This document shows, piece after piece, positions 20,911-62,864 of a stretch of 64,000 bases of DNA. Under the pieces are notes generated by a model. The model made no database searches. It saw only the letters and a program-made list of their open reading frames with translations, and was not told where the DNA came from. Location of the stretch: IMG/VR virus record IMGVR_UViG_3300028364_000014, positions 62,001 through 126,000 of that record. One strand, 5' to 3'. Made by a program: the position numbers and the translations under genes. Each line of letters starts with the position of its first letter. Position 1 is the stretch's first letter.

Positions 20911-21168
20911 TTAATTATAATTTATAATCAATGAGGAGAATTAAAATGGAAAAACAAATTGAAAATCAAAAAAAAATCTTTAGTGTAGTTAAATGTTTAA
21001 ATAAACTAGATAATTGTGATAAAAAATGTCATGTTTGTGCAGTACAAGAAGGATGTGATAATCTATGTAGTTATGCAGTAAAAAACAATATAAATGAAAA
21101 AACCCAATGTATTTATTGGGAAAAATAACAAAAAGAATTTAAAAATACCAGAGACAAAGGAAATTATT

Positions 21169-35588: not shown

Positions 35589-35715
35589 GTTAATGCGGCA
35601 CTTTGGTATAGAGGGTTACATATACCCTTTCTAATCTACTTGTCTATAAAGACCTACTTGGGAAGATTATAAAAGTTAGATTAATATAAACTTGTTCTTA
35701 AAAGGAGAACCGAAA

Positions 35716-43194: not shown

Positions 43195-43957
43195 AGTAAG
43201 AATGGCTCCTGCTTTAATAAAAGCTAATCCATATCGGTCAAGTATAACTGACCATAACTTGCATTTTTCTTTAGTAGGACCTCAGGTTTTGAAAAAAGAC
43301 GATATTCAATTTAGGCATCAAATAAGTAAATTTGTTACTTGTCGAGAAGAATTGTGCTGCATGCCTAGGCAGTATATAAACAAAACTAGTAAATATGTTG
43401 CTAGTGAAAAAGAAGATCATCTAGATTTGGAAAAATTTCGTCTACTAATGGCTAGTAAAGGAAATAAAGAAGTTAGAAAACGTGGTATTTTTTCAGCAAA
43501 GCGAGTTTTAAATATTCTAGAAGAAAAAGCGGGCTGGGAAAAAAGTGTTATTACTACCGTTATATATGAACCAGCAAAAGACGCTAACGTGTATCTTTTA
43601 ACTGGAGATAAACGATGGACAATGGCTCCGCAAATGATGTCTTTAGCTACTTTAATCATACGTATTGGGTGGAAAGGGTTAGGGTTTTCTTCAGAAAATA
43701 TTGAAGAAGTACAAACGGAATTTGCAAAAATTTCAGAAGATGAAGAAGAAAATGATAATCGTTATATGAAATCCTGTCAGAAATACATAATCCCTTTAAT
43801 GGCTAATGTAGAAAAAGTTTTTTCTGGAGAAATTAACCAATATTTTCCAGAAGACGCTGATTTCGGATTTAGAGGGCATGGCGGTATATACACCTTTTTT
43901 ACAGAACGTAGTGGTAATGAAAAATTAGATGAACGTCTAACAAAGTATGTTAAATAA
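43154..43957 (+). CDS. paralog family C protein
   Basis: CREE, VLNILEEK, W....QMMSLATLIIR, HGGI. Confidence 0.65.
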   Translation: MTKEVKKEKKKLIRVRMAPALIKANPYRSSITDHNLHFSLVGPQVLKKDDIQFRHQISKFVTCREELCCMPRQYINKTSKYVASEKEDHLDLEKFRLLMASKGNKEVRKRGIFSAKRVLNILEEKAGWEKSVITTVIYEPAKDANVYLLTGDKRWTMAPQMMSLATLIIRIGWKGLGFSSENIEEVQTEFAKISEDEEENDNRYMKSCQKYIIPLMANVEKVFSGEINQYFPEDADFGFRGHGGIYTFFTERSGNEKLDERLTKYVK

Positions 43958-43969
43958 GGATTAAAAAAA

Positions 43970-44899
43970 ATGACATCAAAAATTATGATGGGAACCGATC
44001 CAGAGTTTTTCATGAGAAGACTAGAAGACAACAAACTTATTTCAGCAGTACCATTTATTGCTGGAGGTAAACATGACCCTATTAAGTTAGAAAAATCTGG
44101 AGGAACACTTCAACATGACAATGTAGCAGTAGAGTTTTCAACAGTTCCAGCAAATTCTCCGCAAACTTTTGTTGACATTCTCCGCGCTACTCTACAAGAA
44201 ACGATTTCTAAGTTGCCTCCTGGTCATGAACTATTGGCTTCAGCTTCTGCTGTATTTGATGATAATCAGCTTAATACTCCTGAAGCGCAGGAGTTTGGAT
44301 GTACACCTGATTATGATGCGTGGGAAGTAAAAGAGAATGACTCACCGACCCATCCAAACGCTAAATTTAGGTCATGTGGTGGACATTTACATATTGGATG
44401 TCTTGATATGGAAGGTAAACTTACACATGAGGATGCAAAATTTCTATTAACTTTTGAAGGTAAGCTCGATATGGTAAAAGGTATGGACCTATTTTTAGGC
44501 ATTATCTCTACTGTACTCGATAGTTCACCTGAAGCAGTTGAGCGCAAGAAGCTTTATGGTAGAGCTGGGTGTCATCGAGGTACACTATATGGTGTAGAAT
44601 ATAGGGCATTGAGTAACTTTTGGACTAAATCACCCATGCTATCCATGCTAATGACTTCTCTTTCGGAAGATGTAGTAGAAGTTATTATCAACGAAAAACT
44701 TGAAGCTTTAATTGAAGAAGTAGGCGCTGAGGATATCCAACGAATCATTAACACTGGTGCAGTAAAAGATGCTGAAAAGATCATAGAAAATGTTCTAACA
44801 GCGTATCTTAGCGAAGATTCAAAGTTCTATCTAGAAGAATGTCTTATTAAATTAGATAAAACAGATACAATTGAGAAGGAATGGTCAATTGGGGCTTAA
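43970..44899 (+). CDS. phiEco32-like COOH.NH2 ligase type 2
   Basis: GTDPEFF, DNVAVEF, GCTPD, RSCGGHLHIG, YGRAG..R...YGVEYR.LSNFW. Confidence 0.88.
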   Translation: MTSKIMMGTDPEFFMRRLEDNKLISAVPFIAGGKHDPIKLEKSGGTLQHDNVAVEFSTVPANSPQTFVDILRATLQETISKLPPGHELLASASAVFDDNQLNTPEAQEFGCTPDYDAWEVKENDSPTHPNAKFRSCGGHLHIGCLDMEGKLTHEDAKFLLTFEGKLDMVKGMDLFLGIISTVLDSSPEAVERKKLYGRAGCHRGTLYGVEYRALSNFWTKSPMLSMLMTSLSEDVVEVIINEKLEALIEEVGAEDIQRIINTGAVKDAEKIIENVLTAYLSEDSKFYLEECLIKLDKTDTIEKEWSIGA

Positions 44900-45639
44900 T
44901 TTTTACACCTAAGCTCATAATACCCACATCCTGGAAGCTTGTGTGCCTTCTTATGACATGTTTTGCATAAAGTAATGGTGTTAGCCACATCATTTCCTAA
45001 ACGTGGATTCTGGGTGTATCCTTCGATGTGATGGCAATGTAGTGGAGCTTCATTTTGAGTTGCTCCACAGATTTGGCACGTCCAGTTATCTTTTTCAAAA
45101 CACATTTGTCTAACTAGTGGATTTACTTCGCGAGAAGATGCAGGTTTGAATCCTTTAGGGTATTTAATTTGTTTGTACACAGGGCAAGCCTCTTTACAGT
45201 TATTTGAGCAGTAAAGAAAATGGTCTTTACCTATAGAGTCTAAAGCCTTTACTCTACTATTAACACTGCATCTATTAGGGATAAAGTATTTTCCGCAATA
45301 CCTACATTTTACTTCTAAAGAAACACCGTCATTAGCTAATCTAGGGAATTCTTCTTTAGTTAATTCACCAATAAATAATTTATATTTTGCATTAGAGTTT
45401 TGGTATGATTTACATCTTATAGAAGTACTAATTTTATTTTCCTTATAGTACTTTTTATATTGTTTTTTATGTTTATTTTTATTTTTTAATCGGTAATTAA
45501 TGATATAATTTTTATTATTCTCACGATCAATTTTTATACATTTTTTACAATAACTAGTTACTCCATCCTTAGTGTTTTTATTTTTATTAAATTCACTATA
45601 ACTTTTTAATTCTTTACATTTACTACACATTTTTTTCAT
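44896..45639 (-). CDS. HNH endonuclease (homing-type)
   Basis: CSKC N-terminus; DNWTCQICG...HCHH...N.ITLCKTCH. Confidence 0.88.
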   Translation of the reverse strand: MKKMCSKCKELKSYSEFNKNKNTKDGVTSYCKKCIKIDRENNKNYIINYRLKNKNKHKKQYKKYYKENKISTSIRCKSYQNSNAKYKLFIGELTKEEFPRLANDGVSLEVKCRYCGKYFIPNRCSVNSRVKALDSIGKDHFLYCSNNCKEACPVYKQIKYPKGFKPASSREVNPLVRQMCFEKDNWTCQICGATQNEAPLHCHHIEGYTQNPRLGNDVANTITLCKTCHKKAHKLPGCGYYELRCKN

Positions 45640-45679
45640 AATTAATTTCCAAATAAGTTTTTTTTATTTATGTGATTAA

Positions 45680-45744
45680 ATGATTGTATCTTAATTACAA
45701 TCAAGTTACATTAAATATAATAACTTTATTGAATAAGTCAATAG
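45680..45744 (-). promoter_or_regulatory. sigma70-like promoter and palindrome upstream of HNH gene
   Basis: minus strand TTGACT-N16-TATATT then tgattgta..tacaatca; same layout at 55509-55590. Confidence 0.6.
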
Positions 45745-45781
45745 ATTAATTAATTGATAAATAAAACGGAGAAATAAACAC

Positions 45782-46660
45782 ATGATTATTGCTATACCCA
45801 CAAATAACGGAGATACCTACAAAGAAGTACCAGTAAGAAAACAAAACGCTTCTTATTGCAAACACGTAGAAAATGCTGGATTTGATCCAATCCTCATTCC
45901 TATGGAGTGTTCTATTGAAGCAGTAGCAGACATGTCCGATGGGCTTCTACTGGCAGGAGGGCTAGATATAAGTCCAATGTATTATGGTTTTAGTAATTTG
46001 GCGTCATTTGGTGTAGACCCTGACAAAGACGCACATGAAAGAGCTCTACTACATGCTTTTATTGCGCTAGGTAAACCAGTGTTTGGAATATGTAGAGGAC
46101 ATCAGCTTATTTTAAGGGAGTTTATGCATGTTACTAATGACATGGATAATATCCTTGAATATGAAGAACATATTAAATATCACGCACAAACAGGTGAGTT
46201 AAATATGGGAAGAAAACACCCTTCTCATATGACGCAGACAGTAATTAATTCTTTATTTACTGAGTCTATAGTAGATAATGATGAAGCTATAGAAAATTTT
46301 CCAGTAAATAGTATGCACCATCAAGCTGTAACCGCAAATATTGTAAAAATGGCAGTCGGTAATGGGAATGTTCCACATGATTTTCAGTATAATATTCCTC
46401 CAGTAAAGGTATATGAGAATTTTGAACTAATTTCCTGGACTAAAAGAGGATATACACAGCCTGATGTACATTCTAAAAATTTCGATAGAACTGATCATAG
46501 AGTAGTTGTTGAGGCAATGAAAATTGATTGGAATAACTCAAAAATTATGGGAGTACAATGGCATCCAGAATGTCTTGGTGATGTTCGTATTATACGTAAT
46601 TTCTTTTTAAATGCTGTTGAAAACATAAATGATGATGCAGCAATTGCAGCTCTAGGCTAA
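45782..46660 (+). CDS. class I glutamine amidotransferase (peptidase C26 family)
   Basis: GLLLAGG.DI, GICRGHQ, VNSMHHQA, QWHPE. Confidence 0.9.
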   Translation: MIIAIPTNNGDTYKEVPVRKQNASYCKHVENAGFDPILIPMECSIEAVADMSDGLLLAGGLDISPMYYGFSNLASFGVDPDKDAHERALLHAFIALGKPVFGICRGHQLILREFMHVTNDMDNILEYEEHIKYHAQTGELNMGRKHPSHMTQTVINSLFTESIVDNDEAIENFPVNSMHHQAVTANIVKMAVGNGNVPHDFQYNIPPVKVYENFELISWTKRGYTQPDVHSKNFDRTDHRVVVEAMKIDWNNSKIMGVQWHPECLGDVRIIRNFFLNAVENINDDAAIAALG

Positions 46661-46907
46661 TGGTACGTGGTTGGTCTACTAAAATTACTACTACTTATGG
46701 AACTCAACTACACCATTATATAACTTTAAAAGCATTAAAAAATACCATTAAACGATTAAAAAACAGCAGAATTAGTCCTTTAGCCATAAGATTTTATAGA
46801 CCAATGCTTCCATGGTTAATAGAAAATGTAACAGAAGATTCAGCTGTTTCTGGCGATATATCAAATATTAAAATAGAAGTTTCATTGTTAAATATAGGAG
46901 AAATAAA

Positions 46908-47216
46908 ATGAGTAAAAAATCAATAATTACGTCAATTCTTATGGATAATACAAAAATTCCCGCAATAGCTGCTGTACATTACGGTGTAGGGGATGTTCCT
47001 AAAACGAGTACTGGGGATGACGCTGGACAGCATGCAGTTACTTCAATTAAATTTGCAAGAAAATGTTTTGGTCAGGGGGCAGTAATAGATATTCCTTGTT
47101 ATGTAATTGAATTTGAAGATGTAGATGAAAAAGTAATTCTTGCAACTAATAGTATTGCTAGATGGACAATTGGAAACGAAGAAATAGATGCCGTTCCCCC
47201 TTTGGCTGCAGAATAA
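46908..47216 (+). CDS. hypothetical protein
   Basis: RBS aggag, ORF. Confidence 0.65.
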   Translation: MSKKSIITSILMDNTKIPAIAAVHYGVGDVPKTSTGDDAGQHAVTSIKFARKCFGQGAVIDIPCYVIEFEDVDEKVILATNSIARWTIGNEEIDAVPPLAAE

Positions 47217-47223
47217 GGAAATA

Positions 47224-47931
47224 ATGAATAATAAAATACTCGTGTTAAATGGTTCTTCTTACGCAACACCTTTTAAGGGGTTGGGTGAAATTGTTATCGA
47301 TATTGATGTGTTTTTGGAAAATCCAGGTGATTTTAAATTAGTGATGTTTACTGGAGGAGAAGACGTTACTCCTTCTTGGTATGGTGAAACAAGCCCTAAT
47401 CATGTATGCTATTATAATGAGCGAAGAGATAAAGAAGAAGCTATTGTATTTAAGTTAGCAGAAAGACGTGGAATACCTATGATGGGTATTTGTAGGGGAA
47501 TTCAATTTCTAAATGTTATGCATGGTGGAAAAATATTCCATAATGTTACTAATCACGCTGGTCCTAGACACATGATGACTCTTGGTAATGGTGAGGAATT
47601 TGTTGTGAATTCTTTTCATCATCAAATGGTAATACCTCCTGAAGATTCAATTGTAATAGCCTACTCGTCTACCCGTAAATCTACAAGCTATATAGGAGAT
47701 AAAGATCTAGAAGTATCTCCTCCTAATGTAGAGGTAGAAGCAGTAGCTTATCCTAATACCAAAAGTGTGGCAGTCCAATATCATCCTGAAATGATGGATA
47801 CGACTTCTAAAGGGTTTCTTTGGTTTAGAGAACTAGCGACTACCCTATTAACAGAAGAAGGTTTCGCTGAAATTATTGAAAAATATTCCTCGGTGAATAA
47901 ATGTCTAAAACAAAGTACGCATCAGCTATAA
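47224..47931 (+). CDS. second class I glutamine amidotransferase (C26 family)
   Basis: FTGGEDV, GICRGIQ, VNSFHHQ, QYHPE. Confidence 0.9.
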   Translation: MNNKILVLNGSSYATPFKGLGEIVIDIDVFLENPGDFKLVMFTGGEDVTPSWYGETSPNHVCYYNERRDKEEAIVFKLAERRGIPMMGICRGIQFLNVMHGGKIFHNVTNHAGPRHMMTLGNGEEFVVNSFHHQMVIPPEDSIVIAYSSTRKSTSYIGDKDLEVSPPNVEVEAVAYPNTKSVAVQYHPEMMDTTSKGFLWFRELATTLLTEEGFAEIIEKYSSVNKCLKQSTHQL

Positions 47932-48881: not shown

Positions 48882-49304
48882 ATGGGAAAAAGAACAGTAA
48901 CTCTAAAATTTTGGGAAATTGATAACCCGGATTCTAAAAAACCTAGTCAAGCTATGAAAGCACGTTTACTAGGAGTTCTTTCTAGTGAAGAAGTTGCTGC
49001 AACTCTCGCTAATTTTGAAATAGCAGAAAAATTATTTACTAAACCTACTATTAATTTGGATGAAGCAGTGCAAGCGATAGAGGAATTAAATAGTACAAAA
49101 AATAGTACTAATTACGGCCACTTGTTATTTGCAGCCAAGGAATTCAATGAAGTTGAATCATATGGAAAAAGACTGTGTATAACGGGTGCTGTTGACATAC
49201 TTAATCAAACTAGATTTGATAAACTTACCAGACTTATGGATTTAGATGCTACACTTATGGATGGTACGCTTATAAATGTAAAGGAATATAGAAAAGATGA
49301 ATAA
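48882..49304 (+). CDS. hypothetical protein
   Basis: RBS aaggag. Confidence 0.65.
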   Translation: MGKRTVTLKFWEIDNPDSKKPSQAMKARLLGVLSSEEVAATLANFEIAEKLFTKPTINLDEAVQAIEELNSTKNSTNYGHLLFAAKEFNEVESYGKRLCITGAVDILNQTRFDKLTRLMDLDATLMDGTLINVKEYRKDE

Positions 49305-50160
49305 AAACTTACTAACATGTAGCCTACATGCCCCAGGTACCCCATTCACAGTTAAAGAAACTATTAAAGACAATACATTTATTCCAGGTACTTATGGTTT
49401 CATTTCTCTTTTGAGTGGTCCAGACTACACACTGCATAATATTGGTTTTTTAAAAGTTATAATTCTCAGAAAAGGTAAAAAAGGAAAGGCTCGTATAAAT
49501 ACTAATAATATTCTTACTCCTTTGTTTCAGTTACCGGAAGATAAATACCCAGAAAAACTAATTCCAACTGAAGAAGAATTAAAATACCTAGTAGGTATTG
49601 AAACGGAAGAAAATCGTGTTATAAATATGTGTGATAAAAATACTTCAGACGATGAGTTTTTAGGGTGGTTATTGGCGCGTACTTTATTTGCTTATGAGTT
49701 AAGTAAAGTCACCTATCCAAGCGATAATAAGATTATGCGGGTATTAGGCATTAATGGTGGACAACGTATGGTTGCATGGTGCAATAAAGGCGCACTTCTT
49801 GAAAAATTCCGTAAAGAAATAGAAAATCGTTTTAATGATGGTGAAATGGATAGAATGTATGGTAAGTATTGTACTCAAGAGGCTAAATTTGAATTACTAA
49901 CGCAATTAAGAAAAGTAGAAGCAAGACTTATTATTCCAAGACTTGAGTATCAAAGACGGGTTAATGAGGTGTTAATGGGCGCACTTAAAATGATGGAGGT
50001 TACAATCCAAGAAGAAAAGGATTTTAATAATAAAGAAAATACCGTAGAAAAAATCATAGCCACCAAAGAATGGGTTAAAACTAATGGTGATGTTATTAAA
50101 TCCGCTATTTATCAGCGTGTTGGATTAATTTCTAAAAACAGAGAAATTTTAAATTTTTAG
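49297..50160 (+). CDS. hypothetical protein, probable paralog of next gene
   Basis: PGT.F.V...PGTYGF...KGKKGKAR...EFLGWL. Confidence 0.65.
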   Translation: MNKNLLTCSLHAPGTPFTVKETIKDNTFIPGTYGFISLLSGPDYTLHNIGFLKVIILRKGKKGKARINTNNILTPLFQLPEDKYPEKLIPTEEELKYLVGIETEENRVINMCDKNTSDDEFLGWLLARTLFAYELSKVTYPSDNKIMRVLGINGGQRMVAWCNKGALLEKFRKEIENRFNDGEMDRMYGKYCTQEAKFELLTQLRKVEARLIIPRLEYQRRVNEVLMGALKMMEVTIQEEKDFNNKENTVEKIIATKEWVKTNGDVIKSAIYQRVGLISKNREILNF

Positions 50161-50169
50161 GAGAAAATT

Positions 50170-51033
50170 ATGCTTATGACTGTTGGGACTAAAGTAGAAG
50201 TAATTGCTTCTACTATTAAAAAAAAGGGAGCTAAACCAAGGGCTGGCAGTCAAGGGTATTGTATAACGAGTGATAAACTTTGTCATATAAATGGACCTAA
50301 TGTAATAGCGGTACCTGCTTCTATTGTTTTTACAAAATTTGGACATCAAACTAAACGTAGAAGTGAATTAAAAAATGTATGCCTTATATACCCTAAAGAT
50401 AAAAGACCAATAAAAAATGTTAAACCATACTTAAATAAATTATTAAAAAACACAAAAGACTATGCATCAATAAATTTTATTATGCGTTCCCTTTGTAATA
50501 AAAAAATGACATCAGCAACAGACTTAATGATAATTAAACCAATAGTAACTTCAGAGAATATCAAAAATTCATCAAACGAATTTAATTCTTGGTTAAGATG
50601 TGTTCTTTATAGTACTAAAGTACGTCAACTATTTATAAGTAAATATAAGGATGAAAGAGCCCTTGTAAGTAAAAATTTTCTAAAAGGATTACCCTTTTCT
50701 ACTGATGTTTTAATAGATATAATTCGCAATAAACATAAATTTATAAAATTAGCAAGTTTTCTATTTAAACACCCGTATAATAAAGTATTAATGAAAAATA
50801 TCGCAGGACTAAATCAATATTTGTTACAAGACGCCATTAATAAAGCAGTATACCAATTAACCGTTACATGGAAAACTGAACAAAATGTAATTAATTCGGC
50901 ATTAACATTAGGTAATTTAGATAGACACTTAACTCAGAAGGAGATAGAGAAATTTAAAGTTCGGTTAAGTCCATCGGCACTTCATGCCTATGAGACTGTA
51001 TGGAACTGGTTAGACGTATTAAAAACATTATAA
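50170..51033 (+). CDS. hypothetical protein, probable paralog of previous gene
   Basis: VGTKVEV...AGSQGY...KFGHQTKRR...EFNSWL. Confidence 0.65.
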   Translation: MLMTVGTKVEVIASTIKKKGAKPRAGSQGYCITSDKLCHINGPNVIAVPASIVFTKFGHQTKRRSELKNVCLIYPKDKRPIKNVKPYLNKLLKNTKDYASINFIMRSLCNKKMTSATDLMIIKPIVTSENIKNSSNEFNSWLRCVLYSTKVRQLFISKYKDERALVSKNFLKGLPFSTDVLIDIIRNKHKFIKLASFLFKHPYNKVLMKNIAGLNQYLLQDAINKAVYQLTVTWKTEQNVINSALTLGNLDRHLTQKEIEKFKVRLSPSALHAYETVWNWLDVLKTL

Positions 51034-51068
51034 AATCAGTAAATGCTATTAAAGGGAGATCAATATCC

Positions 51069-54000
51069 ATGACCAGTATTGAAATAACTACACAAGTAGA
51101 AACTATGGCAAATTTGATTAGAGACCAATTTACTTCTAGAACAGAGATTGAAGGTCGTAGGACTGGTAAAGATTTTCGTGGTGCTAAAATGGATATCACT
51201 TTTACTAATGGTCAAATGTGGATTACTGTTGTATTAGAAGATGAAGCACATACTATTACTGTGCCCATTCCTTATATCGAAAATGGGGTTGAATTAATTA
51301 AATCCAATGAAGTTAAACGATCAATATGCAAACATTTTGACGTTACGAATAATATTGAAATTTCATATCTGGATGTTATTCAAAAAATCTTCATTGGTGA
51401 CCCTATTGGGCTTGTTACTAATATAAAAGTAAAGAAAAGTTCCTTTGTTCAACAAATTGCTTATTCAATTTTAAATAAAAATACCTCCATTATCATATAT
51501 AATCTTCAAAAAGCAATCAGTGAAATTGTTAATAAAATGCCTTTACATGAGACATTTATGAACAGTTATATCATGAACCAAAGACTTATGATGGTAGATC
51601 CGGTATTTAATCGTATGTCTTCTCCACAAGATCTTTTAGATTATCAAATCGATAAAAATAAGTATTATTTCAATAACGGATGGACATCTGTTGGATTATC
51701 GGATGGAACTCTTGCGAATAAGAATTATATTTTAAAGAAAGATATCAAAGCTTTAACGGTGTTTGGTATACATCACCATAACCCGCAAAGAAATCTATTT
51801 TCAACCCTTGGTATGAGAGGAGATGAGCTCCCACAATTAAGGTCAGCTTCTGCACAAGAGTTGATTGAATCAGGCATTACACGCACAGGTTGGAATCTGT
51901 TTACTCTTTTTGCGGATGTTCCAGATAATTTTGAGGATCAAGTATTAGTGGATATTTCTCACAAAGATAAAGCTATTATTTCTGAACGGAGATTCCAATG
52001 CTTTGGAGAGATTCTGGTAAAAGAAGGGCAAAGAATTAAATTAGGTGATTCATTAGTTAAATGTTCAGATGGTGAAATTACTTCTTATCAAGTAAAAGCT
52101 GACGAGTCCTGGATACACAAGATTATTAAATCTCACACAGTAGTTGGAGGTGTTAAAACTGAGGTTTATAATGTACTTATAAAATTTAAAAGATTTCTTA
52201 AAGATGCGACTAAACTTACCAACACTCATGGTAATAAGGGTGTAATTAGATTATTTGATCTTGGGTATGCAATTGATCCGGCTACAGGTAAACCCCGTAA
52301 GATAGATGTTATTGTGTCAGCTAAATCTGTAAAGAGACGTAAAAATTATGGTCAAATATTTGAAGCTTTAGTAAATGTAGTACATGAACGTAATACTGCT
52401 GAAGTAAATACACCAGAAATAAGTTCTATCAGTAATTGGTCAAAAAGAGGAGTTGCAGTTACTTCTAAAATTACCTCTAAAGTATTACCAATTAAACCGT
52501 TAATATATGCAGACAATTATACATTCGATGATGAAAAAGAAGCGCAGCTTAAACAAAACTTGATAGATTCTGGTATACCCGAGGATGGTACTTGGAGATG
52601 TGATACTTATGTTGGAGAAATCTACGGAGTTTGTGGTACGGTATTCTGGGGGGTTACCAAAGAACCTGAAGATCAATTGTGGGCAGAGGGGGCTACTGAA
52701 AGAACCAATGGTAAAGATCTTAGAGTTGCTGGTTTAAAATTTTCAACTGTAGAATTTAAAGCACTGGAAACACATTTTGGTATTGACAATGCTGTGTCAA
52801 GAGAAGTTCTTTCTTATACACAAGGTATTGAAAATATTGATGAAACTCTACAGATTCTTAGAAGTCAGTTTGGAATTATTACCAAAAATGTACCAACAAA
52901 GAAAGTATATGAAATAAAATCCGTTGATCAGAGTAACGGTACTATTTTTACTAAAGAATCTTTACTAGATACAGTAGCAGATGAAAATATGTTGAGGGAT
53001 GGGTTTATTTTACATTTACCTGTACAATTTCAAACTGCTGTAGGAATAAAGAACAGTGATTCTTATGAAGGTGCTCCAGTATTTGATCCCGCTATGATGG
53101 ACTGGTCTGTGTTTAAAGTATTATATACTACCGATAAGATATACATTCCAGAAGGCAGTATGCGTAGAAATTGGCGACATAGTACTGGTATGTACGGCAT
53201 GAGTGAAATAGCTGTATTAATAAATAATATTATTATGTTTTCTAATAATTATCTTGCAGAGCCGAATGAGGCCCATCATATTAGAATGTTGTATAACGCA
53301 CTTAGAAATTATTTCTTTAGAATGTCTAGTTCTGTAGGTACAAAGAAAGGAGATGTATCTAGTTATGCGATGTCAGTAAGATATCCTTATTCAGCTAAAG
53401 CTGTTGCAACACTATCTACTACAATACCACCACAAACAATCCAAATTCATAGTGATATGGCAAATTCTCTTAAAGTGACTGAAGGAGATGTAGTAATAGT
53501 TGAAAGGTTCCCTTGTCTTGGTTTTATGGGAATACGTCCTCAAAAAGTAACAATAACAGATGATCCAATGTGTAAATACACAATCAGAGCATCAGGCAAT
53601 AGTTTAGTATCTACTAATTTAGATTTTGATGGTGATGTGATTTATATTGCGGCTTTTCATACACCAGAGGCAGTGGCATTACTACAAAAAGAGTGGCTTA
53701 CTCCTAATCCCGAAACTTGGAAATATATCGATCAATTGAATAAACGAAAGGGAGAACCTTGCATTAATCTTTTAAGTCTCCCTGAGTACGAAATGACTCC
53801 TTTTACAGCCCTAACTTGTGAGGACCAAGCAGGTATTGTTAGAAAATTAACAGGAGTTAAAGCACAAACAGGTCCTGTAATTGCAATGGCCTATAATATC
53901 ATGCGTATTATGGAAAATTCAGGTAATGAGTTAACTAATGCCCAGCAAGCATCTATCGAAATGTTTATTGAAAAGACAGGACAATCTGTATTTGAGCAAA

Positions 54001-54536
54001 AACATGGTGGCATTTCATTGTGTGAAATTGTACTTGAAGCTGTATGTACGGGTGATATTGACACACTAGTAAAAGAAGGTTATGATGCAGAAGTAACTAC
54101 TCTTATCTGTAAAACCATTGATAGAAAAGCCAAGAGTATAGGAATCAATGACCTTAAAGATTATCATTACAAAATAGGTATCCACGGTTCCAATATTGTA
54201 AATCGCATTGTGAAAACTGAAAATAAAGTCTATTTTGCGAGCCGTTCAGATTTAGATACCTATAGTCTTTTAGAATGCCTTTCTTCACCGGTTGTGGATC
54301 TCCCTAGTCGTATATTTGCACTTACTATGTCTGGTAAATACAATAACGAACGTAATTTCTTGATTGAGGAAAAAGAAAGAAAGATGTTATCAGCAATTAA
54401 AGATGATGATTTGAGAAAAGGTTGTACAGATTTGTTTGGACTTATTGATAAAATGATGGGTAATGTTAAAAAAGGAGCAACAATTAGCAATAATGTTAGG
54501 CTAGGTTCTTGCTTGTTGAAAAAAAGTATAAAATAA
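51069..54536 (+). CDS. single-chain two-barrel DNA-dependent RNA polymerase (beta-like + beta'-like)
   Basis: beta-like HHNPQRNL, NFEDQV, TKLTNTHGNKGV, IDVIV; beta'-like VERFPCL and NLDFDGD; start at ATG after gggag. Confidence 0.88.
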   Translation: MTSIEITTQVETMANLIRDQFTSRTEIEGRRTGKDFRGAKMDITFTNGQMWITVVLEDEAHTITVPIPYIENGVELIKSNEVKRSICKHFDVTNNIEISYLDVIQKIFIGDPIGLVTNIKVKKSSFVQQIAYSILNKNTSIIIYNLQKAISEIVNKMPLHETFMNSYIMNQRLMMVDPVFNRMSSPQDLLDYQIDKNKYYFNNGWTSVGLSDGTLANKNYILKKDIKALTVFGIHHHNPQRNLFSTLGMRGDELPQLRSASAQELIESGITRTGWNLFTLFADVPDNFEDQVLVDISHKDKAIISERRFQCFGEILVKEGQRIKLGDSLVKCSDGEITSYQVKADESWIHKIIKSHTVVGGVKTEVYNVLIKFKRFLKDATKLTNTHGNKGVIRLFDLGYAIDPATGKPRKIDVIVSAKSVKRRKNYGQIFEALVNVVHERNTAEVNTPEISSISNWSKRGVAVTSKITSKVLPIKPLIYADNYTFDDEKEAQLKQNLIDSGIPEDGTWRCDTYVGEIYGVCGTVFWGVTKEPEDQLWAEGATERTNGKDLRVAGLKFSTVEFKALETHFGIDNAVSREVLSYTQGIENIDETLQILRSQFGIITKNVPTKKVYEIKSVDQSNGTIFTKESLLDTVADENMLRDGFILHLPVQFQTAVGIKNSDSYEGAPVFDPAMMDWSVFKVLYTTDKIYIPEGSMRRNWRHSTGMYGMSEIAVLINNIIMFSNNYLAEPNEAHHIRMLYNALRNYFFRMSSSVGTKKGDVSSYAMSVRYPYSAKAVATLSTTIPPQTIQIHSDMANSLKVTEGDVVIVERFPCLGFMGIRPQKVTITDDPMCKYTIRASGNSLVSTNLDFDGDVIYIAAFHTPEAVALLQKEWLTPNPETWKYIDQLNKRKGEPCINLLSLPEYEMTPFTALTCEDQAGIVRKLTGVKAQTGPVIAMAYNIMRIMENSGNELTNAQQASIEMFIEKTGQSVFEQKHGGISLCEIVLEAVCTGDIDTLVKEGYDAEVTTLICKTIDRKAKSIGINDLKDYHYKIGIHGSNIVNRIVKTENKVYFASRSDLDTYSLLECLSSPVVDLPSRIFALTMSGKYNNERNFLIEEKERKMLSAIKDDDLRKGCTDLFGLIDKMMGNVKKGATISNNVRLGSCLLKKSIK

Positions 54537-54545
54537 TTAATTTAA

Positions 54546-55475
54546 CTAATCTCTGATGCATTGAAGTTCGTGATAATTGCATCCTGGGAGCTTATGTACC
54601 TCTTTATGACATGTTTTGCATAAAGTAATGGTGTTAGTCACATCATTTCCTAAACGTGGATTCTGGGCGTATCCTTCGATGTGATGGCAATGAAGTGGAG
54701 CTTCCTTTTGGGTGGCTCCGCAAATTTGACATCTCCAATTATCTCGCTCGAAACACATTTGTCTAACTAGAGGATTAACCTCACGGGAGGATGCGGGTTT
54801 GAATCCTTTAGGATAAAGTACTTTTTTATAAATTGGACAAGCTTGTTTGCAGTGGTCAGAGCAATATAAAGACTGTTCTCCAAGTACTTGACCTAATAGT
54901 GATTGAATTCTACGATAAGTTTGTGCCATATAAGGAATAAAATATTTACCGCAGTATCTGCACTTGACTTCTAAAGAAGTACCATTTTTAGCAAGCCTTG
55001 GTGCTTCATCAGTAGTTAATTTATCTTTAAATACTTCATATGTAGCATTAATATTATTACGTTGCTTGCTACGGATAGATATTTCTTCTTTATTATTAAT
55101 TCGATATTGTTTATCTCTTATAGCTATTCTTTCTTTATTATCTTGATAATATTGATCCATTTGTGCTTTTCTTTTTTTTCTCACTAAAGTGAATTTTTCT
55201 GTGTTATCGTCATAATATTGTTTTCGTTGCTTTGCAATTTTTTCCTTATTATCAATGTTATATTGTTTAGCCTTTTTTGCAATACTTTCTTTGTTACTAA
55301 TTTGATATTGTCGTTTTCGTTTAGTTATTTTTTCTTTATTATCAATTTGATATTGTTTTCTTTTTATAAGTATACATTCCTTACATTCTTTTCTATAATC
55401 ATCGATACTATTTTTTCTTTTATAAAACTCGCTTAAATCTTTTAACTCTTTACATTTAGTGCAAATTTTTTTCAT
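54546..55475 (-). CDS. HNH endonuclease (homing-type), paralog of 44896..45639
   Basis: near-identical C-terminal YPKGFKPASSREVNPLVRQMCFE.DNW.CQICG...HCHH...LCKTCH. Confidence 0.88.
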   Translation of the reverse strand: MKKICTKCKELKDLSEFYKRKNSIDDYRKECKECILIKRKQYQIDNKEKITKRKRQYQISNKESIAKKAKQYNIDNKEKIAKQRKQYYDDNTEKFTLVRKKRKAQMDQYYQDNKERIAIRDKQYRINNKEEISIRSKQRNNINATYEVFKDKLTTDEAPRLAKNGTSLEVKCRYCGKYFIPYMAQTYRRIQSLLGQVLGEQSLYCSDHCKQACPIYKKVLYPKGFKPASSREVNPLVRQMCFERDNWRCQICGATQKEAPLHCHHIEGYAQNPRLGNDVTNTITLCKTCHKEVHKLPGCNYHELQCIRD

Positions 55476-56958: not shown

Positions 56959-57510
56959 ATGTATAAAAACAATAGACGTAAGAAAAAGAAACAAAAACTA
57001 TTACATAAAGCTAAATTTAAACAGATGTTTTGTACTAAATGCGGTATTTGTCCTATCGGAAGTAACCCGAAATTTTGTTATGGTGTATTGTATAAAAACA
57101 ATCCAGAACAATTTACTAATGTAGTTTTTCCTAAAATGATGGAGAATCATGATATATTAAAAGATCAGATAGTTCCAGATTTTGAGGGAAATACACTTTT
57201 AATTACCGCATTTTTTAATAATATACTGTGTGATGACGAAATATGTACAAAGTGTACAAAAAACAAAGATACGGATAAAATATTAAATTGTTTAGCTAAA
57301 TTCAGATTACAGTGTAAACCGGGGTATCAAACTGTACAAGAAATTAAGAATCAATCAAAAAAGGAACGAAAAGCTCAAAATAAAATTAAACAGGCAAATA
57401 ATTTAAAACTTAAAGCTAATGCTACGGTTACTGTATTAATGAGTACTGACGCAGAGTTCCTTGAAGCGGTGGAAAAAATACTTGGAAATAATAATAAGCA
57501 ACAAAATTAA
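56959..57510 (+). CDS. Cys-rich hypothetical protein
   Basis: FCTKCGIC, C...CTKC. Confidence 0.6.
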   Translation: MYKNNRRKKKKQKLLHKAKFKQMFCTKCGICPIGSNPKFCYGVLYKNNPEQFTNVVFPKMMENHDILKDQIVPDFEGNTLLITAFFNNILCDDEICTKCTKNKDTDKILNCLAKFRLQCKPGYQTVQEIKNQSKKERKAQNKIKQANNLKLKANATVTVLMSTDAEFLEAVEKILGNNNKQQN

Positions 57511-59962
57511 AATTAAAGATCCGCACCCAGTCATAAAAGAAATTCTTCTTGAACAATTAAAGCACAATAATCCTAAGTATGTAGACGCAGAGAAAATGGG
57601 CAAAAGTACTTATAAGATTGATGAATTTCTATGCAATTATGAATTTGACGAGGATAGTAGCATGTACATACCAAGAGGTATGCGAGGTCCTTTATTAGAG
57701 CATTTAAATGCTTTAGGACTACCGACTCAAATAAGTGATGAACGTGCTATGAACTTTATAGGGTATCTAGACGGATCTAAAATAAATTATCGTAAATACC
57801 AACAACCTGCTATAGAAAAATTGTTACATGAAGGGCCAGAAGGAGTTTTAGTGGCTCCACCAGGGAGTGGTAAAACTGTTATGGGATTAAGTTTAATTCC
57901 TGTACTATTACAAAATACATTATGGTTAACTCATACAGATAGACTATTTAAACAAACTTATGAAAGGTGTTTAGAATTTTTACCAGGACTTAAAGAAGAT
58001 GATATCGGTATGATTGGAGGAGGAAAATGGAAAATTGGTAAAGTACTTACTATAGGAATGATTCCTACACTAGTAAGAAACATTGAAAAATTAAGTGAAT
58101 TAAAAAATCACTTTGGTCTTGTTGTCTTGGATGAGTGTTTAATAGCTGGTACTAAAATAACCATGCTTGATGGTACTTCTTGTAATATAGAAAATGTAAA
58201 AAATGGAGATGTTACGACCTTTGGAAAAGTAACTAATAAATTTGAAAGAAAAACAGATTCGTTAGTAAAACTGAGATGTTCTATAGAAGAACTCGTTGGT
58301 ACGCCTACACATCAATTACCTTTTATATCGAGAAATAAAGTATCAATTAATAAACATACTAATTCGTGGGAGCCTTTCAATGAAAAAGATGTAACTTTTG
58401 AAGAAATAAAAAATATAAATAAAAATGATTATTTATTAGTGAAGGAAGATGCACCACATACAGAGAGATTTAATATAGGAAAAAGAAAAGCAAGATTACT
58501 GTCTTTAATAGCGTGTGATGGACACATAGAAAAGAATTTAAGGTGTCTTCAGGTAGGTATTACAAAAGATAAAGATTGGTTCTTATCCGAAATGTGGCAA
58601 AACACTTTAATCTATAATGATCATAACATACACTTTAGCGACTGTGCTAGAGGAGATTTAATAATAAGAAGTTATTCAAAGAAGTCTATTGCAGATATGC
58701 ATCATTATATTCCAAAAGGTAACAAATCAAAAAACATTCGAGTTCCTCATATAATAATGAATGGAAGTTACGAAGATATAATTAATTACTTACAAGTAGC
58801 TTTTGATTGTGAAGGCAGTGTGACAGACCAAATAACAATAACTATGGCAGGTAAAGATTTTATTAAAGATATACAGTCCTTATTACGTAAATTTGGTATT
58901 ATAGGTAGATTAATTCCTATACCATCTAAAGACCATTTAAGACTGGCAATGACTGGTTATGATGCGTTTTTATTTTGGAAAAAAATAGGATTTTCCATGC
59001 CAAGAAAACAACAAAAATTAAAAGAGCTGTTAAACAAAGCTAGTAAATATCGAAAAATAATAAAATTTCGTGGCATTTCGTATAGATGTGTAAGAGTACT
59101 AAACAAAGAAATAATAAACAAAAGTACAACAGTATATGATTTCACCACGGAACAGCACTTATTTATTGCTAATGGGATATTAAGTTCAAATTGTCATCAT
59201 TGTCCAGCTTCAACATTTTTATCGGTTATCTCGCAATTAAACCCTTATTTCTTGTATGGACTAACAGCTACTGCTTATCGAAGAGACAAGTTAGAGTCTA
59301 TGATGTTTCAATGTCTAGGTCCTATAAGATCAAAAATTACTAAAGATACAGTTGCTGCACATAAGGGTATTATATCTCCTAAAATTATATACACAGCTAT
59401 TAAGCATTTACATAAAGTAGATGGTAATGATATTCCAACTATCTTTAAAAATCATATTATATATAATCATAAGCGTAATGCTCAAATAGTGAAGGATGTA
59501 GTAAGAGAAGCTAAATTAGGTAATTTTTGTATCATAGCTTCTGGGAGGAAAGTCCATTGTGATTTGCTACATGAAATGATTAAAAAAGAGTGGAGTAGGA
59601 CAGGGGTTGCTACTGGAAATTATAGTAAGAAAATAATTGATGGTCAAATTGAGGCATTTAACAACAACGAAATAACGGTACTAATAACAACCTCAGAATT
59701 ACTTGGAGAAGGTTTTGATGTTGATTTTTTAAATAGGTTATTTATTACAACACCCTTTAGAACAGAAGCTAGGGTAGAACAGTTAGTAGGCAGAATTCAG
59801 CGTTTTCACAAAGATAAAAAGGACGCAATTGTTTATGATTATGTCGATGAAGGCATAGGTGTATTAGTTAATCAATTCTATTCTAAGTACGGAGAATGTA
59901 GGAGTAAAGTTTATAAGAGATTGGGACTCGAAATGCTATCCTACGATCAACACGTATTATAA
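57461..59962 (+). CDS. superfamily 2 DExH helicase containing an intein
   Basis: YQQ, APPGSGKT, DE|CHH after splicing, GLTAT, GEGFD, QLVGRIQR. Confidence 0.9.
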   Translation: MKRWKKYLEIIISNKIKIKDPHPVIKEILLEQLKHNNPKYVDAEKMGKSTYKIDEFLCNYEFDEDSSMYIPRGMRGPLLEHLNALGLPTQISDERAMNFIGYLDGSKINYRKYQQPAIEKLLHEGPEGVLVAPPGSGKTVMGLSLIPVLLQNTLWLTHTDRLFKQTYERCLEFLPGLKEDDIGMIGGGKWKIGKVLTIGMIPTLVRNIEKLSELKNHFGLVVLDECLIAGTKITMLDGTSCNIENVKNGDVTTFGKVTNKFERKTDSLVKLRCSIEELVGTPTHQLPFISRNKVSINKHTNSWEPFNEKDVTFEEIKNINKNDYLLVKEDAPHTERFNIGKRKARLLSLIACDGHIEKNLRCLQVGITKDKDWFLSEMWQNTLIYNDHNIHFSDCARGDLIIRSYSKKSIADMHHYIPKGNKSKNIRVPHIIMNGSYEDIINYLQVAFDCEGSVTDQITITMAGKDFIKDIQSLLRKFGIIGRLIPIPSKDHLRLAMTGYDAFLFWKKIGFSMPRKQQKLKELLNKASKYRKIIKFRGISYRCVRVLNKEIINKSTTVYDFTTEQHLFIANGILSSNCHHCPASTFLSVISQLNPYFLYGLTATAYRRDKLESMMFQCLGPIRSKITKDTVAAHKGIISPKIIYTAIKHLHKVDGNDIPTIFKNHIIYNHKRNAQIVKDVVREAKLGNFCIIASGRKVHCDLLHEMIKKEWSRTGVATGNYSKKIIDGQIEAFNNNEITVLITTSELLGEGFDVDFLNRLFITTPFRTEARVEQLVGRIQRFHKDKKDAIVYDYVDEGIGVLVNQFYSKYGECRSKVYKRLGLEMLSYDQHVL
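58136..59191 (+). mobile_element. intein (352 aa) with LAGLIDADG homing endonuclease
   Basis: starts CLIAGTKI, block B TPTHQ, LSLIACDG and LQVAFDCEG, ends VYDF...ANGILSSN before +1 Cys. Confidence 0.9.
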
Positions 59963-59996: not shown

Positions 59997-61193
59997 TTGG
60001 ATAATTTTAAAATAAAAATTTCAAACACAATGACAGAACAAATGGGTTTATATGGTAATGAGAATCATATGATCCGAATACCTAAGGTTTTACGTACTAA
60101 TTTACAACGCAATCTAGGAGAACGTATCCCATTTACCTGTGTTCAAGGTAAGCCTGTGGTATTAGAAATATCAGAAGCATTTAAACATGACTCAGAGCAA
60201 GATAGTAGTGTTTGTTATGTAACTGAAGAAACATTTAATACAATAAATATTGAACGTACTCCGATATACATACCTAAGCAAATAGAAACTATAACTTTGG
60301 GATGTGACCCAGAATTCTTTTTATTGGATAGACAATCGAAAAAATTACTTAGGGCTTATATGTTTTTTAAGAAATTTGGTGAAGTTGGTAATGATGGAAT
60401 ATTAGCAGAATTTAGACCTAAACCAACATTAACCCCACAAGATCTTACTAATAATATTTACAAACTAATTGTGAAAACAAAAAAGCTTTTAAGTACAAAT
60501 TCAATACATAATCCTGATGATATTATACTACATGCAGCTTCAAGTTATGAAGGATATACTGCGGGATTTCATTTACACTACGGATTACCTAAAGAGATGC
60601 TGGGTAGAAAATCAGATAGACTAGTGGTTATTAAAAAAATAATGAGAGCTCTAGATTATTATATAGGTATTCCAGCTATTATGGCGGAAGAAGTAACTGA
60701 TTTTAAACGAAGAGTGAATACATATGTGTCTTATGGTAAACCCAGTGATTTTAGAATTGATCATAGAACTTTAGAATATCGAGTTCCAGGAGGAAGTCTT
60801 TTAAGACATCCTGATCTAACATTAGGATTAATTGCTTTAGGATCTACTGTAATTACTGACCTCATGATTAAAGTGAAGTCTATAACTAATGAATTTAAAC
60901 ACTTAAGTTTTATGAATAATGATGATCGTTTGCAAGAAATATACCCGAATACACCAAGAATAATGACTATGTATGAAATTATATGCTCTCCAAACACAGA
61001 TAGAGCTAAAACATATTTGGATAGTATATATAATGATATAACTAGAATGATTGATTTTAATAAAAACAGCAAGGCAATTAATAAATTATTTACTATTTTG
61101 TCTAATAATAAAGAACTAATTGACCAAGGAATGGAATTAAACTGGAGGAATACCTATGAACAACGACATCACTTTCACCAAACATCCAATTAG
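59997..61193 (+). CDS. second COOH.NH2 ligase type 2 with extra N-terminal domain
   Basis: LGCDPEFF, DG..AEFRP, TAGFHLHYG, YGKP..FR....LEYR. Confidence 0.82.
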   Translation: MDNFKIKISNTMTEQMGLYGNENHMIRIPKVLRTNLQRNLGERIPFTCVQGKPVVLEISEAFKHDSEQDSSVCYVTEETFNTINIERTPIYIPKQIETITLGCDPEFFLLDRQSKKLLRAYMFFKKFGEVGNDGILAEFRPKPTLTPQDLTNNIYKLIVKTKKLLSTNSIHNPDDIILHAASSYEGYTAGFHLHYGLPKEMLGRKSDRLVVIKKIMRALDYYIGIPAIMAEEVTDFKRRVNTYVSYGKPSDFRIDHRTLEYRVPGGSLLRHPDLTLGLIALGSTVITDLMIKVKSITNEFKHLSFMNNDDRLQEIYPNTPRIMTMYEIICSPNTDRAKTYLDSIYNDITRMIDFNKNSKAINKLFTILSNNKELIDQGMELNWRNTYEQRHHFHQTSN

Positions 61194-62844: not shown

Positions 62845-62864
62845 ATAATAAATAAAGGAATTAT

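What the first reader, a model, noticed from the sequence alone, without database searches (positions are those of the whole stretch)
51069..54536. Compact single-polypeptide RNA polymerase joining beta-like and beta'-like catalytic barrels
Seen: one uninterrupted ~1150-aa ORF holds beta-type motifs (HHNPQRNL, GWNL...NFEDQV, VKEGQRIKLGD, KLTNTHGNKGV, DVIV) then beta'-type motifs (VERFPCL, NLDFDGD, with Leu for the usual Ala). Established: cellular and phiKZ-type RNAPs split these across chains; single-chain two-barrel enzymes are known (SPbeta YonO, crAss-like virion RNAP) but are highly diverged. Inference: a minimised fusion retaining recognisable beta similarity, possibly a distinct phage RNAP lineage. 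No sigma factor is recognisable in the window.
Basis: partly seen in the sequence, partly recalled or inferred. Interest (0 to 1): 0.8.

Follow-up and report, generated by a model that had tools for sequence, protein, structure and literature searches.

The report
Compact single-chain phage RNA polymerase
An uncultured giant phage from lake water encodes, in one 1,155-residue protein, a stripped-down but apparently complete version of the two catalytic subunits of cellular RNA polymerase. It belongs to a family of over 200 unnamed metagenomic proteins that I could not find described anywhere.

Summary
Window 51069-54536 (+) is one uninterrupted ORF of 1,155 aa with a good ribosome-binding site. 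The N-terminal half matches RNA polymerase beta and the C-terminal half matches beta'. Support comes from Pfam on 35 and 29 of 38 family members, from a PDB profile search (RpoB 4.5e-8, Rpb1 3.4e-5), and from Foldseek on a confident AlphaFold model (pLDDT 89, pTM 0.85; RpoB 1.9e-11, beta' 1.1e-9). The two Lys of KxxxxHGNKG, the DFDGD triad, the unusual Leu before it and a trigger-loop-like His are invariant in 38 homologues that share only 33-84% identity with the window protein. The protein belongs to a family of more than 200 full-length, unnamed metagenomic proteins on phage contigs of up to 330 kb. Gene order around it is conserved. No relative was found among 50,697 deposited phage genomes. 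It sits with the multisubunit-type polymerases rather than with YonO, crAss gp66 or QDE-1. Its nearest architectural analogue is the yeast killer-plasmid beta-beta' fusion K2ORF6p. I read it as an active phage DNA-dependent RNA polymerase. Activity, partner proteins, promoters and timing are untested. I rate it a new variant of a known kind, with interest about 0.65.

The parts
51069..54536 (+). Gene for the 1,155-aa single-chain beta-beta'-like RNA polymerase. An alternative in-frame ATG lies at 51000.
51051..51058 (+). Shine-Dalgarno-like AAGGGAG upstream of the 51069 start
   Evidence: read from the sequence
51774..51797 (+). HHNPQRNL (aa 236-243), matched by pattern to E. coli beta FLEHDDANRALMG...P. 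R241 and N242 are invariant in the family.
   Evidence: the correspondence is inferred from the motif pattern
51888..51944 (+). GWNL...NFEDQV (aa 274-292): start of the beta-type barrel, equivalent to E. coli beta GQNM...NGYNFEDS. D290 is invariant.
51942..52196 (+). Beta-rich insert of about 85 aa inside the beta-type barrel (aa 292-376, includes VKEGQRIKLGD). It is a candidate minimal flap or hybrid-motif domain. The E. coli equivalent is about 250 aa.
   Evidence: DSSP of the model; Pfam Rpb2_6 match 337-449; the fold assignment is inferred and not verified
52212..52373 (+). KLTNTHGNKGV...IDVIVSAKSVKRRKNYGQIFE (aa 382-435): catalytic part of the beta barrel. K382, N385, N389, K390, G391, R424, N426 and Q429 are invariant.
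52728..52769 (+). AGLKFSTVEFKALE (aa 554-567), matched by pattern to the beta C-terminal region GGQRFGEMEVWALE. G555, K557 and E562 are invariant.
   Evidence: inferred correspondence
53139..53180 (+). IYIPEGSMRRNWRH (aa 691-704): first beta'-type block, equivalent to E. coli beta' LPVLPPDLRPLVPL. The roughly 240 N-terminal residues of beta' have no counterpart here.
53340..53408 (+). TKKGDVSSYAMSVRYPYSAKAVA (aa 758-780), equivalent to beta'/Rpb1 KGKxGRxRxNLxGKRVDxSxRxVI. K759, G761, R771 and P773 are invariant.
53499..53636 (+). VERFPCLG...NLDFDGD (aa 811-856): beta'-type barrel with the metal-binding triad. R813, P815, G818, L851, D852, D854, G855 and D856 are invariant.
53817..53915 (+). 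33-residue helix (aa 917-949) placed where a bridge helix would be. K931, T934, G935, Y942, R946 and E949 are invariant.
   Evidence: the assignment is inferred
53997..54011 (+). QKHGG (aa 977-981), trigger-loop-like; compare E. coli beta' MRTFHIGG. K978 and H979 are invariant.
   Evidence: the assignment is inferred
49297..51033 (+). Two fast-evolving 287-aa genes immediately upstream. They keep this position in the closer relatives and have no recognisable family. They are candidate accessory factors only.
57461..59962 (+). SF2 helicase (ResIII + Helicase_C, interrupted here by an intein with LAGLIDADG). It is linked to the polymerase gene in every family locus examined.

Best explanation
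The gene encodes an active DNA-dependent RNA polymerase of the two-barrel (multisubunit-type) class, with the conserved cores of beta and beta' joined in one 1,155-aa chain. The N-terminal ~600 residues supply the beta-type barrel with its two active-site lysines (K382, K390) and the NFED and fork-like motifs. After a short linker that replaces the beta' N-terminal clamp and zinc region, the C-terminal ~450 residues supply the beta'-type barrel with the Mg-binding DFDGD, a bridge-helix-like helix and a trigger-loop-like QKHGG. The host genome is an uncultured jumbo phage (contig of at least 238 kb, AT-rich, from lake and salt-lake water). I infer that the enzyme transcribes phage genes independently of the host polymerase. 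It is most likely made after infection, because the gene lies among metabolic and replication-type genes rather than structural genes. Shown: homology of both halves, intact and invariant catalytic residues, a confident crab-claw-type fold prediction, a single chain throughout the family, and conserved synteny. Inferred: catalytic activity, DNA template, self-sufficiency, timing and promoter recognition.
For: Pfam Rpb2_6 and Rpb1_2 hit the window protein and 35 and 29 of 38 relatives. PDB profile hits: RpoB 4.5e-8; Rpb1 3.4e-5 in two collinear segments; P23-45 gp96 6.8e-5; AR9 beta' 1.2e-4. AlphaFold gives pLDDT 89.4 and pTM 0.85. Foldseek finds RpoB/Rpb2 homologues for the whole model, and bacterial beta', AR9 beta', Rpo1N and Rpb1 for residues 640-1132, with about 250 columns at about 4 A. 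The catalytic residues are invariant although identity to the window protein falls to 33% (A1; 84% is the highest, A2). There are 210 homologues and 56 clusters with E<1e-30. Gene order is conserved on contigs of up to 330 kb. The same ORF is intact in independent samples. The surrounding genes are phage genes.
Against: There is no biochemical or expression evidence, and no RNA run holding the gene was listed. No promoter motif specific to this enzyme emerged; the best candidate is not significant after multiple testing and is absent from relatives. Only 64 kb of a genome of at least 238 kb was read, so a second polymerase, a sigma-like factor or extra subunits may lie elsewhere. Sequence similarity to cellular subunits is confined to short core blocks. 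The bridge-helix, trigger-loop and flap assignments rest on motif patterns and secondary structure, not on a superposition I could inspect.
Confidence: 0.75

Rival explanations
1. It is only the catalytic core of a multi-protein enzyme. Promoter recognition, and perhaps assembly, would need other phage proteins, for example the two fast-evolving 287-aa genes just upstream or the linked SF2 helicase, much as phiKZ/AR9 non-virion polymerases need a fifth subunit.
For: The upstream genes abut the polymerase gene on the same strand and keep their position in the closer relatives. The helicase is linked in every family locus, including those at 35% identity. No sigma factor was found in the window. 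Jumbo-phage polymerases with a linked SF2 helicase are described in PMC7824862.
Against: The upstream proteins have no detectable family, fold lead or mutual similarity. They are not detectable in the most divergent loci. Other single-chain two-barrel enzymes (YonO, P23-45 gp64) are reported to work alone (PMC7481178, PMC10770324).
Confidence: 0.35
2. It is a virion-packaged polymerase injected with the DNA to transcribe early genes, like crAss gp66, the phiKZ virion polymerase or P23-45 gp96.
For: The best full-length structural match among viral models is the N-terminal part of a protein annotated 'minor tail protein' (A0A8S5SD80_1, E 2.7e-16, TM 0.48). The family profile also touches the tail-fused P23-45 gp96. 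Sigma-70-like promoters are not enriched in the region scanned.
Against: The gene is surrounded by amidoligase, amidotransferase, helicase and RNA-repair genes, not structural genes. It is not fused to any virion module. The predicted fold has a clamp-side region, unlike the flat gp96.
Confidence: 0.15
3. The family is already catalogued among the 23 two-barrel polymerase families of Drobysheva et al. and Chaban et al., for example among the 'derivatives with fused DPBB domains' or under the in-house profile Cyano_RUMTOR_01356, so it is not new.
For: Chaban et al. state that their first clade contains multisubunit-type enzymes with fused barrels. They list a DFDGD-bearing profile, Cyano_RUMTOR_01356, in uncultured siphoviruses.
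Against: None of the more than 200 family proteins carries any name other than 'hypothetical protein'. No deposited phage genome has a relative. The genome scan returned only mis-binned MAG contigs, with no Ruminococcus or cyanobacterial record. Five literature searches found no description. The accession carrying that profile that I tried (BK034237.1) was not in the collections I could read, so this is untested.
Confidence: 0.2
4. It has a non-transcriptional role, such as RNA-templated synthesis, primer synthesis, or an inactive scaffold.
For: Two-barrel enzymes include RNA-dependent polymerases (QDE-1) and a DNA polymerase (PolD) (PMC7281927).
Against: All top sequence and structure matches are DNA-dependent RNA polymerase subunits. 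QDE-1 and PolD do not appear among the 50-60 matches listed in each of those searches. The catalytic residues are invariant, which argues against an inactive scaffold.
Confidence: 0.05

Closest known systems
Yeast cytoplasmic killer-plasmid (VLE) RNA polymerase K2ORF6p + K2ORF7p of pGKL2
   Same: The beta-type core is followed by the beta'-type core in one chain. The enzyme is drastically reduced, with no alpha homologue, and is associated with an SF2 helicase (PMC6211774). From my own recollection, its total size is about 1,100 aa.
   Different: The VLE enzyme keeps the last beta' regions on a separate small subunit, whereas here a trigger-loop-like motif lies in the same ORF. The VLE enzyme is eukaryotic-plasmid borne and is placed phylogenetically next to poxvirus polymerases. 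I had no K2ORF6p sequence, so direct similarity is untested. The exhaustive search found no protein of about 970 aa.
Cellular multisubunit RNA polymerase beta and beta' (including natural RpoB-RpoC fusions in some bacteria)
   Same: These are the best sequence and structure matches for both halves. The following blocks are shared: NFED, KxxxxHGNKG, GQIxE, LPxxPxxxRP-like, KxGRxRxNLxGKRVDxSxRxVI-like, RxPxLH-like and NxDFDGD.
   Different: This is one chain of 1,155 aa, against 2,749 aa for E. coli beta plus beta'. The beta' N-terminal ~240 residues have no counterpart. The flap interval is about 85 aa instead of about 250. The insert between the two beta' barrel segments in Rpb1 is absent. Leu replaces Ala before DFDGD. 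Only 10-19% identity in structural alignments.
phiKZ/AR9-type jumbo-phage multisubunit polymerases
   Same: The host is a jumbo phage. The enzyme is of multisubunit type. No sigma factor is seen and an SF2 helicase is linked. The AR9 beta' fragment is among the top structural matches (7s01_d, 1.7e-9; PMC7824862, PMC7598289).
   Different: Those enzymes split beta and beta' into four or more polypeptides, whereas here everything is fused. Sequence similarity is no closer than to bacterial subunits (phiKZ gp71, E 0.31).
Single-chain two-barrel phage polymerases: YonO (SPbeta), crAss-like phi14:2 gp66, P23-45 gp64 and gp96
   Same: Both barrels are in one polypeptide and the enzymes are phage-encoded. 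Full-length structural resemblance to uncharacterised viral single-chain homologues is at TM 0.36-0.49. There is a profile hit to the gp96 barrel (6.8e-5).
   Different: Those families are reported to lack recognisable similarity to cellular beta and beta' models and fall in a separate clade with QDE-1. Here Pfam Rpb2_6 and Rpb1_2 match directly, and beta and beta' outrank them in all searches. gp66 and QDE-1 are not among the listed hits.

Membership tests
Two-barrel (double-psi beta-barrel) RNA polymerase superfamily | A barrel carrying the DxDxD metal-binding triad | tested here: met
   NLDFDGD at aa 850-856. D852, D854 and D856 are invariant in 38 sequences. Rpb1_2 hits. Foldseek beta' 1.1e-9.
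Two-barrel (double-psi beta-barrel) RNA polymerase superfamily | A second barrel supplying two conserved basic residues | tested here: met
   K382 and K390 in KLTNTHGNKG are invariant. Rpb2_6 hits. RpoB 4.5e-8. Foldseek RpoB 1.9e-11.
Two-barrel (double-psi beta-barrel) RNA polymerase superfamily | Template-dependent RNA synthesis | not testable with these tools
   Needs biochemistry.
Multisubunit-type clade (cellular, NCLDV, phiKZ-like, VLE) as opposed to the YonO/crAss/QDE-1 clade | Direct sequence similarity to beta and beta' conserved blocks beyond the DxDxD region | tested here: met
   Blocks are collinear with E. coli beta and beta'. Pfam hits to both subunit families.
Multisubunit-type clade (cellular, NCLDV, phiKZ-like, VLE) as opposed to the YonO/crAss/QDE-1 clade | Hybrid-motif (flap) insert inside the beta barrel | tested here: inconclusive
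   There is an 85-aa beta-rich insert between NFED and K382. I could not inspect coordinates to confirm its fold.
Multisubunit-type clade (cellular, NCLDV, phiKZ-like, VLE) as opposed to the YonO/crAss/QDE-1 clade | Bridge helix and trigger loop with a catalytic His | tested here: inconclusive
   A 33-residue helix spans aa 917-949, and QKHGG is invariant at K978 and H979. The assignment rests on position and motif only.
Canonical multisubunit RNA polymerase | Beta and beta' on separate chains, with alpha dimer and omega | tested here: not met
   A single ORF here and in more than 200 homologues. No alpha or omega was found among the ORFs scanned.
phiKZ/AR9-type jumbo-phage polymerases | Beta and beta' each split into two or more polypeptides | tested here: not met
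   One chain covers all core blocks.
Yeast VLE polymerase (K2ORF6p/K2ORF7p) | Beta-then-beta' fusion in one reduced chain | tested here: met
   The order of motifs runs from beta to beta'. This is an architectural match only.
Yeast VLE polymerase (K2ORF6p/K2ORF7p) | Specific sequence relatedness to K2ORF6p, and a separate K2ORF7p-like subunit | not tested
   No K2ORF6p sequence was available in the collections. The exhaustive phmmer search found no such protein.
YonO / crAss gp66 / QDE-1 clade | Closest sequence or structure similarity to those enzymes | tested here: not met
   They are absent from the 50-60 matches listed for each PDB sequence-profile and Foldseek search, where beta and beta' dominate. 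YonO itself has no PDB entry that I saw.

The most novel reading that the evidence does not exclude
This would be an undescribed, independently minimised lineage of multisubunit-type RNA polymerase. It carries all universal core elements (both barrels, bridge helix, trigger loop) in about 1,100 residues of one chain, which would make it the smallest complete enzyme of that clade. It is fixed in a widespread clade of uncultured jumbo phages. Its strictly conserved linkage to an SF2 helicase and an amidoligase/amidotransferase cluster could mean it is specialised for transcribing a chemically modified phage genome.
Probability: 0.25. Interest if true: 0.85.

Novelty: new variant of a known kind. 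Interest (0 to 1): 0.65.

Why it matters
Multisubunit RNA polymerases are large and hard to reconstitute. The known single-chain two-barrel enzymes are so diverged that they say little about the cellular enzyme. A roughly 130-kDa single polypeptide that still aligns block by block with beta and beta', and appears to keep a bridge helix and trigger loop, would define experimentally the minimal functional core of this enzyme class. It would bear on whether fused or split forms are ancestral, and whether fusion and reduction recur. It could also provide a compact orthogonal polymerase. It adds a third transcription strategy for jumbo phages, besides phiKZ-type split enzymes and sigma-factor hijacking.

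Tried and rejected
- Deposited phage genomes: tblastn gave one weak hit, which turned out to be an ordinary bacterial-type rpoB/rpoC.
- Naming the family: cluster look-ups returned only 'hypothetical protein'.
- Upstream neighbours: PHROGs, a pairwise comparison and the ESM Atlas gave no lead for the two 287-aa proteins.
- The conserved 562-aa neighbour is an amidoligase, not a polymerase part.
- Promoter search: k-mer enrichment and mismatch-seed scans of 32 upstream regions gave only a weak (A/C)CATAGTATAAT. It is not significant after multiple testing, not above shuffles and absent from relatives. Sigma-70-like promoters and terminators are not enriched.
- Expression: no RNA run was listed.
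- hhalign against single E. coli sequences is reliable only for beta 1031-1119; the greedy long alignments were discarded.
- The Cyano_RUMTOR_01356 family could not be fetched; the accession I tried (BK034237.1) was not held.
- Helicase and split-beta relatives gave no close cultured phage.
- A barrel phylogeny was not attempted because I could not assemble archaeal, eukaryotic, NCLDV, phiKZ, YonO and VLE references.
- The assembly-artefact and chance-ORF explanations were rejected.
Full report
**The observation.** Window 51000-54536 (+) is one open reading frame. I take 51069 as the start for three reasons. AAGGGAG lies 9-15 nt upstream and the preceding gene ends at 51033. Homologues of 1,100-1,160 aa align from residues 3-8 of this 1,155-aa form. 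These are HHNPQRNL (aa 236-243), GWNL (274-277), NFEDQV (287-292), VKEGQRIKLGD (317-327), KLTNTHGNKGV (382-392), DVIV (413-416), VERFPCL (811-817) and NLDFDGD (850-856).

**Is it more than chance?** Pfam gives sub-threshold but specific hits: Rpb2 domain 6 at aa 337-449 and Rpb1 domain 2 at aa 793-868. The same two families hit 35 and 29 of 38 relatives, with best E-values of 2.4e-10 and 1.1e-7. PHROGs gives 'RNA polymerase beta subunit'. A profile of the family finds bacterial RpoB in the PDB at 4.5e-8. A profile of the C-terminal half finds Rpb1 at 3.4e-5 in two collinear segments, P23-45 gp96 at 6.8e-5 and AR9 beta' at 1.2e-4.

With 38 aligned relatives, AlphaFold gives pLDDT 89.4 and pTM 0.85. 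Foldseek of the whole model returns RpoB and its archaeal, eukaryotic, poxvirus and ASFV counterparts, from 1.9e-11. A separate model of residues 640-1132 (pLDDT 87) returns bacterial beta', AR9 beta', Rpo1N and Rpb1, from 1.1e-9, over about 250 columns at about 4 A. So two barrels are present, one of each type, in beta-then-beta' order.

**Is the fusion real?** Contigs from independent lake and salt-lake metagenomes span the whole ORF with 0-13 substitutions. The only indel is a 1-nt deletion at 54519, five codons from the end, inside the disordered tail. More importantly, the architecture is a family trait. One search found 210 proteins, the best 120 of them 1,086-1,244 aa long and 46-100% identical over 93-100% of the query. 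The exhaustive search of 1.8 billion cluster representatives found 56 clusters below 1e-30 and then a sharp drop.

**Conservation.** In alignment A1, relatives share only 33-81% identity with the window protein. The invariant columns still include:
- K382, N385, N389, K390 and G391;
- R424, N426 and Q429;
- G555, K557 and E562;
- R699, W702 and H704;
- K759, G761, R771 and P773;
- R813, P815 and G818;
- L851, D852, D854, G855 and D856;
- K931, T934, G935, Y942, R946 and E949;
- K978 and H979.

That is the pattern of a working active site under purifying selection.

**Anatomy.** I compared the protein with E. coli beta and beta' taken from L025. The blocks run in this order:
- FGIHHHNPQRNLFSTLGM...P, against beta FLEHDDANRALMGANM...P;
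- GWNL...NFEDQVLV, against GQNM...NFEDSILV;
- an 85-aa beta-rich insert, where E. coli has about 250 aa of flap;
- KLTNTHGNKGVI...IDVIVSAKSVKRRKNYGQIFE, against KMAGRHGNKGVI...[21 protein letters not shown] (hhalign probability 88%);
- AGLKFSTVEFKALE, against GGQRFGEMEVWALE near the beta C-terminus;
- a linker of about 90 residues;
- IYIPEGSMRRNWRH, against beta' LPVLPPDLRPLVPL (beta' residue ~243);
- TKKGDVSSYAMSVRYPYSAKAVA, against [24 protein letters not shown];
- VERFPCLGFMGIRPQ...NLDFDGD, against NRAPTLHRLGIQAF...NADFDGD;
- a 33-residue helix (aa 917-949) where a bridge helix belongs;
- QKHGG, against the trigger-loop FHIGG.

The Rpb1 alignment shows the two beta' barrel segments contiguous here, whereas Rpb1 has about 60 residues between them. 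The correspondences outside aa 345-437 and 758-870 are inferred from motif patterns and secondary structure. I could not inspect coordinates.

**Genomic setting.** The window matches IMG/VR contig IMGVR_UViG_3300028364_000014 (237,910 bp) at 100% identity. Relatives lie on contigs of up to 330 kb. In genome collections the family appears only on MAG contigs assigned to unrelated phyla, which is the signature of mis-binned phage DNA. The window is AT-rich and nearly all genes are on one strand. It carries phage-type genes: RNA ligase, Ro60/TROVE, NadR-like, PnuC, RtcB, DprA-like, HNH endonucleases, SLT, and several amidoligases and amidotransferases.

Gene order around the polymerase is conserved. 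Two fast-evolving proteins of about 290 aa lie upstream in the closer relatives. An SF2 helicase, a COOH-NH2 ligase, a 562-aa amidoligase and a GATase lie downstream even in relatives at 35% identity. No sigma factor was detected among 60 ORFs scanned with PHROGs, 10 of them also with Pfam. Only a quarter of the genome was visible.

**Mechanism.** The best-supported reading is an active DNA-dependent RNA polymerase that lets the phage transcribe some or all of its genes without the host enzyme. The homology, the intact catalytic residues and the fold are shown. Activity, template, timing and self-sufficiency are inferred. The main open alternative is that it needs phage partners for promoter recognition. 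A virion-packaged role is possible but less likely given the neighbours. I found no convincing promoter motif and no RNA data.

**Comparison with known systems.** It belongs to the two-barrel superfamily. Within that superfamily it sits with the multisubunit-type clade. Cellular beta and beta' and the AR9 beta' fragment outrank all else in sequence-profile and structure searches, and QDE-1 and crAss gp66 are not among the listed hits. By contrast, YonO and crAss enzymes are reported to lack recognisable similarity to beta and beta' models (PMC7481178).

It is not a canonical or phiKZ-type enzyme, because those are split (PMC7598289, PMC7824862). The closest architectural analogue is the yeast killer-plasmid K2ORF6p, a reduced beta-beta' fusion. 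Its authors called that fusion unique and traced it to poxvirus-like polymerases (PMC6211774). The phage family would then be an independent case of the same solution, with the last beta' blocks fused as well. Among predicted viral structures, the best full-length matches are uncharacterised single-chain proteins at 10-11% identity and TM 0.36-0.49.

**Novelty.** No family member is named. None of 50,697 deposited phage genomes has a relative (the single hit is bacterial-type rpoBC). Five literature searches and eight papers gave no description.

I could not compare the family with the 23 catalogued two-barrel families, one of which (profile Cyano_RUMTOR_01356) carries DFDGD. I leave about 20% for 'already catalogued'. 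I rate it a new variant of a known kind, with interest 0.65.

Noticed in passing
window 698-764 (+): A Pistol self-cleaving ribozyme (Rfam RF02679, 49 bits against a gathering score of 34.5) sits in an intergenic gap near the start of the window.
   Followed up: no
window 54546-55475 (-): The HNH endonuclease gene directly after the polymerase gene is absent from relatives L004 and L005. Contig depth rises 6-12 fold at 54583-54700 and contigs break there. It looks like a multi-copy mobile homing endonuclease.
   Followed up: partly
window 57461-59962 (+): The SF2 helicase linked to the polymerase is interrupted by an intein with a LAGLIDADG domain. The orthologue in L004 is 446 aa and lacks it.
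   Followed up: partly
window 21094-21636 and 21967-22557 (+): An RtcB-type RNA ligase is split over two ORFs separated by about 330 nt, matching profile positions 55-205 and 263-434. This could be an intron, an intein remnant or a break.
   Followed up: no
window 41162-47931 and 59997-63719; loci L004, L005, L009-L019: A large cluster of COOH-NH2 ligases, a 562-aa amidoligase and several glutamine amidotransferases flanks the polymerase. It stays linked to it even in relatives at 35% identity. Its product (a peptide, metabolite or DNA modification) is unknown.
   Followed up: partly
window 13000-14764, 19464-20609, 35692-37338: An NAD-salvage set (PnuC, NadR-like) and an RNA-repair set (RNA ligase, Ro60/TROVE with vWA) are present, typical of large phages.
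   Followed up: no
window 1-10000: GC content is about 38-44% in the first 10 kb, against about 25-34% in the rest of the window. ORFs there have almost no family matches.
   Followed up: no
window 12327, 16899, 55590, 56072: A motif, (A/C)CATAGTATAAT, recurs 15-70 nt upstream of several genes. It is not significant after multiple testing and is absent from related loci.
   Followed up: yes
window 54519: Three of four other samples lack one base here, which changes the last five or so codons of the polymerase. The affected tail is predicted to be disordered.
   Followed up: partly
window 8861-9505 and 10208-10669: These intergenic gaps are unusually long (645 and 462 nt), with no ORF and no Rfam match.
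   Followed up: no
L006 (P0213) and L020-L024: Other uncultured phage contigs encode stand-alone beta-like proteins of 500-560 aa. These are the nearest outgroup to the fused family (E 1e-6 to 1e-3) and are themselves far from cultured phage polymerases.
   Followed up: partly
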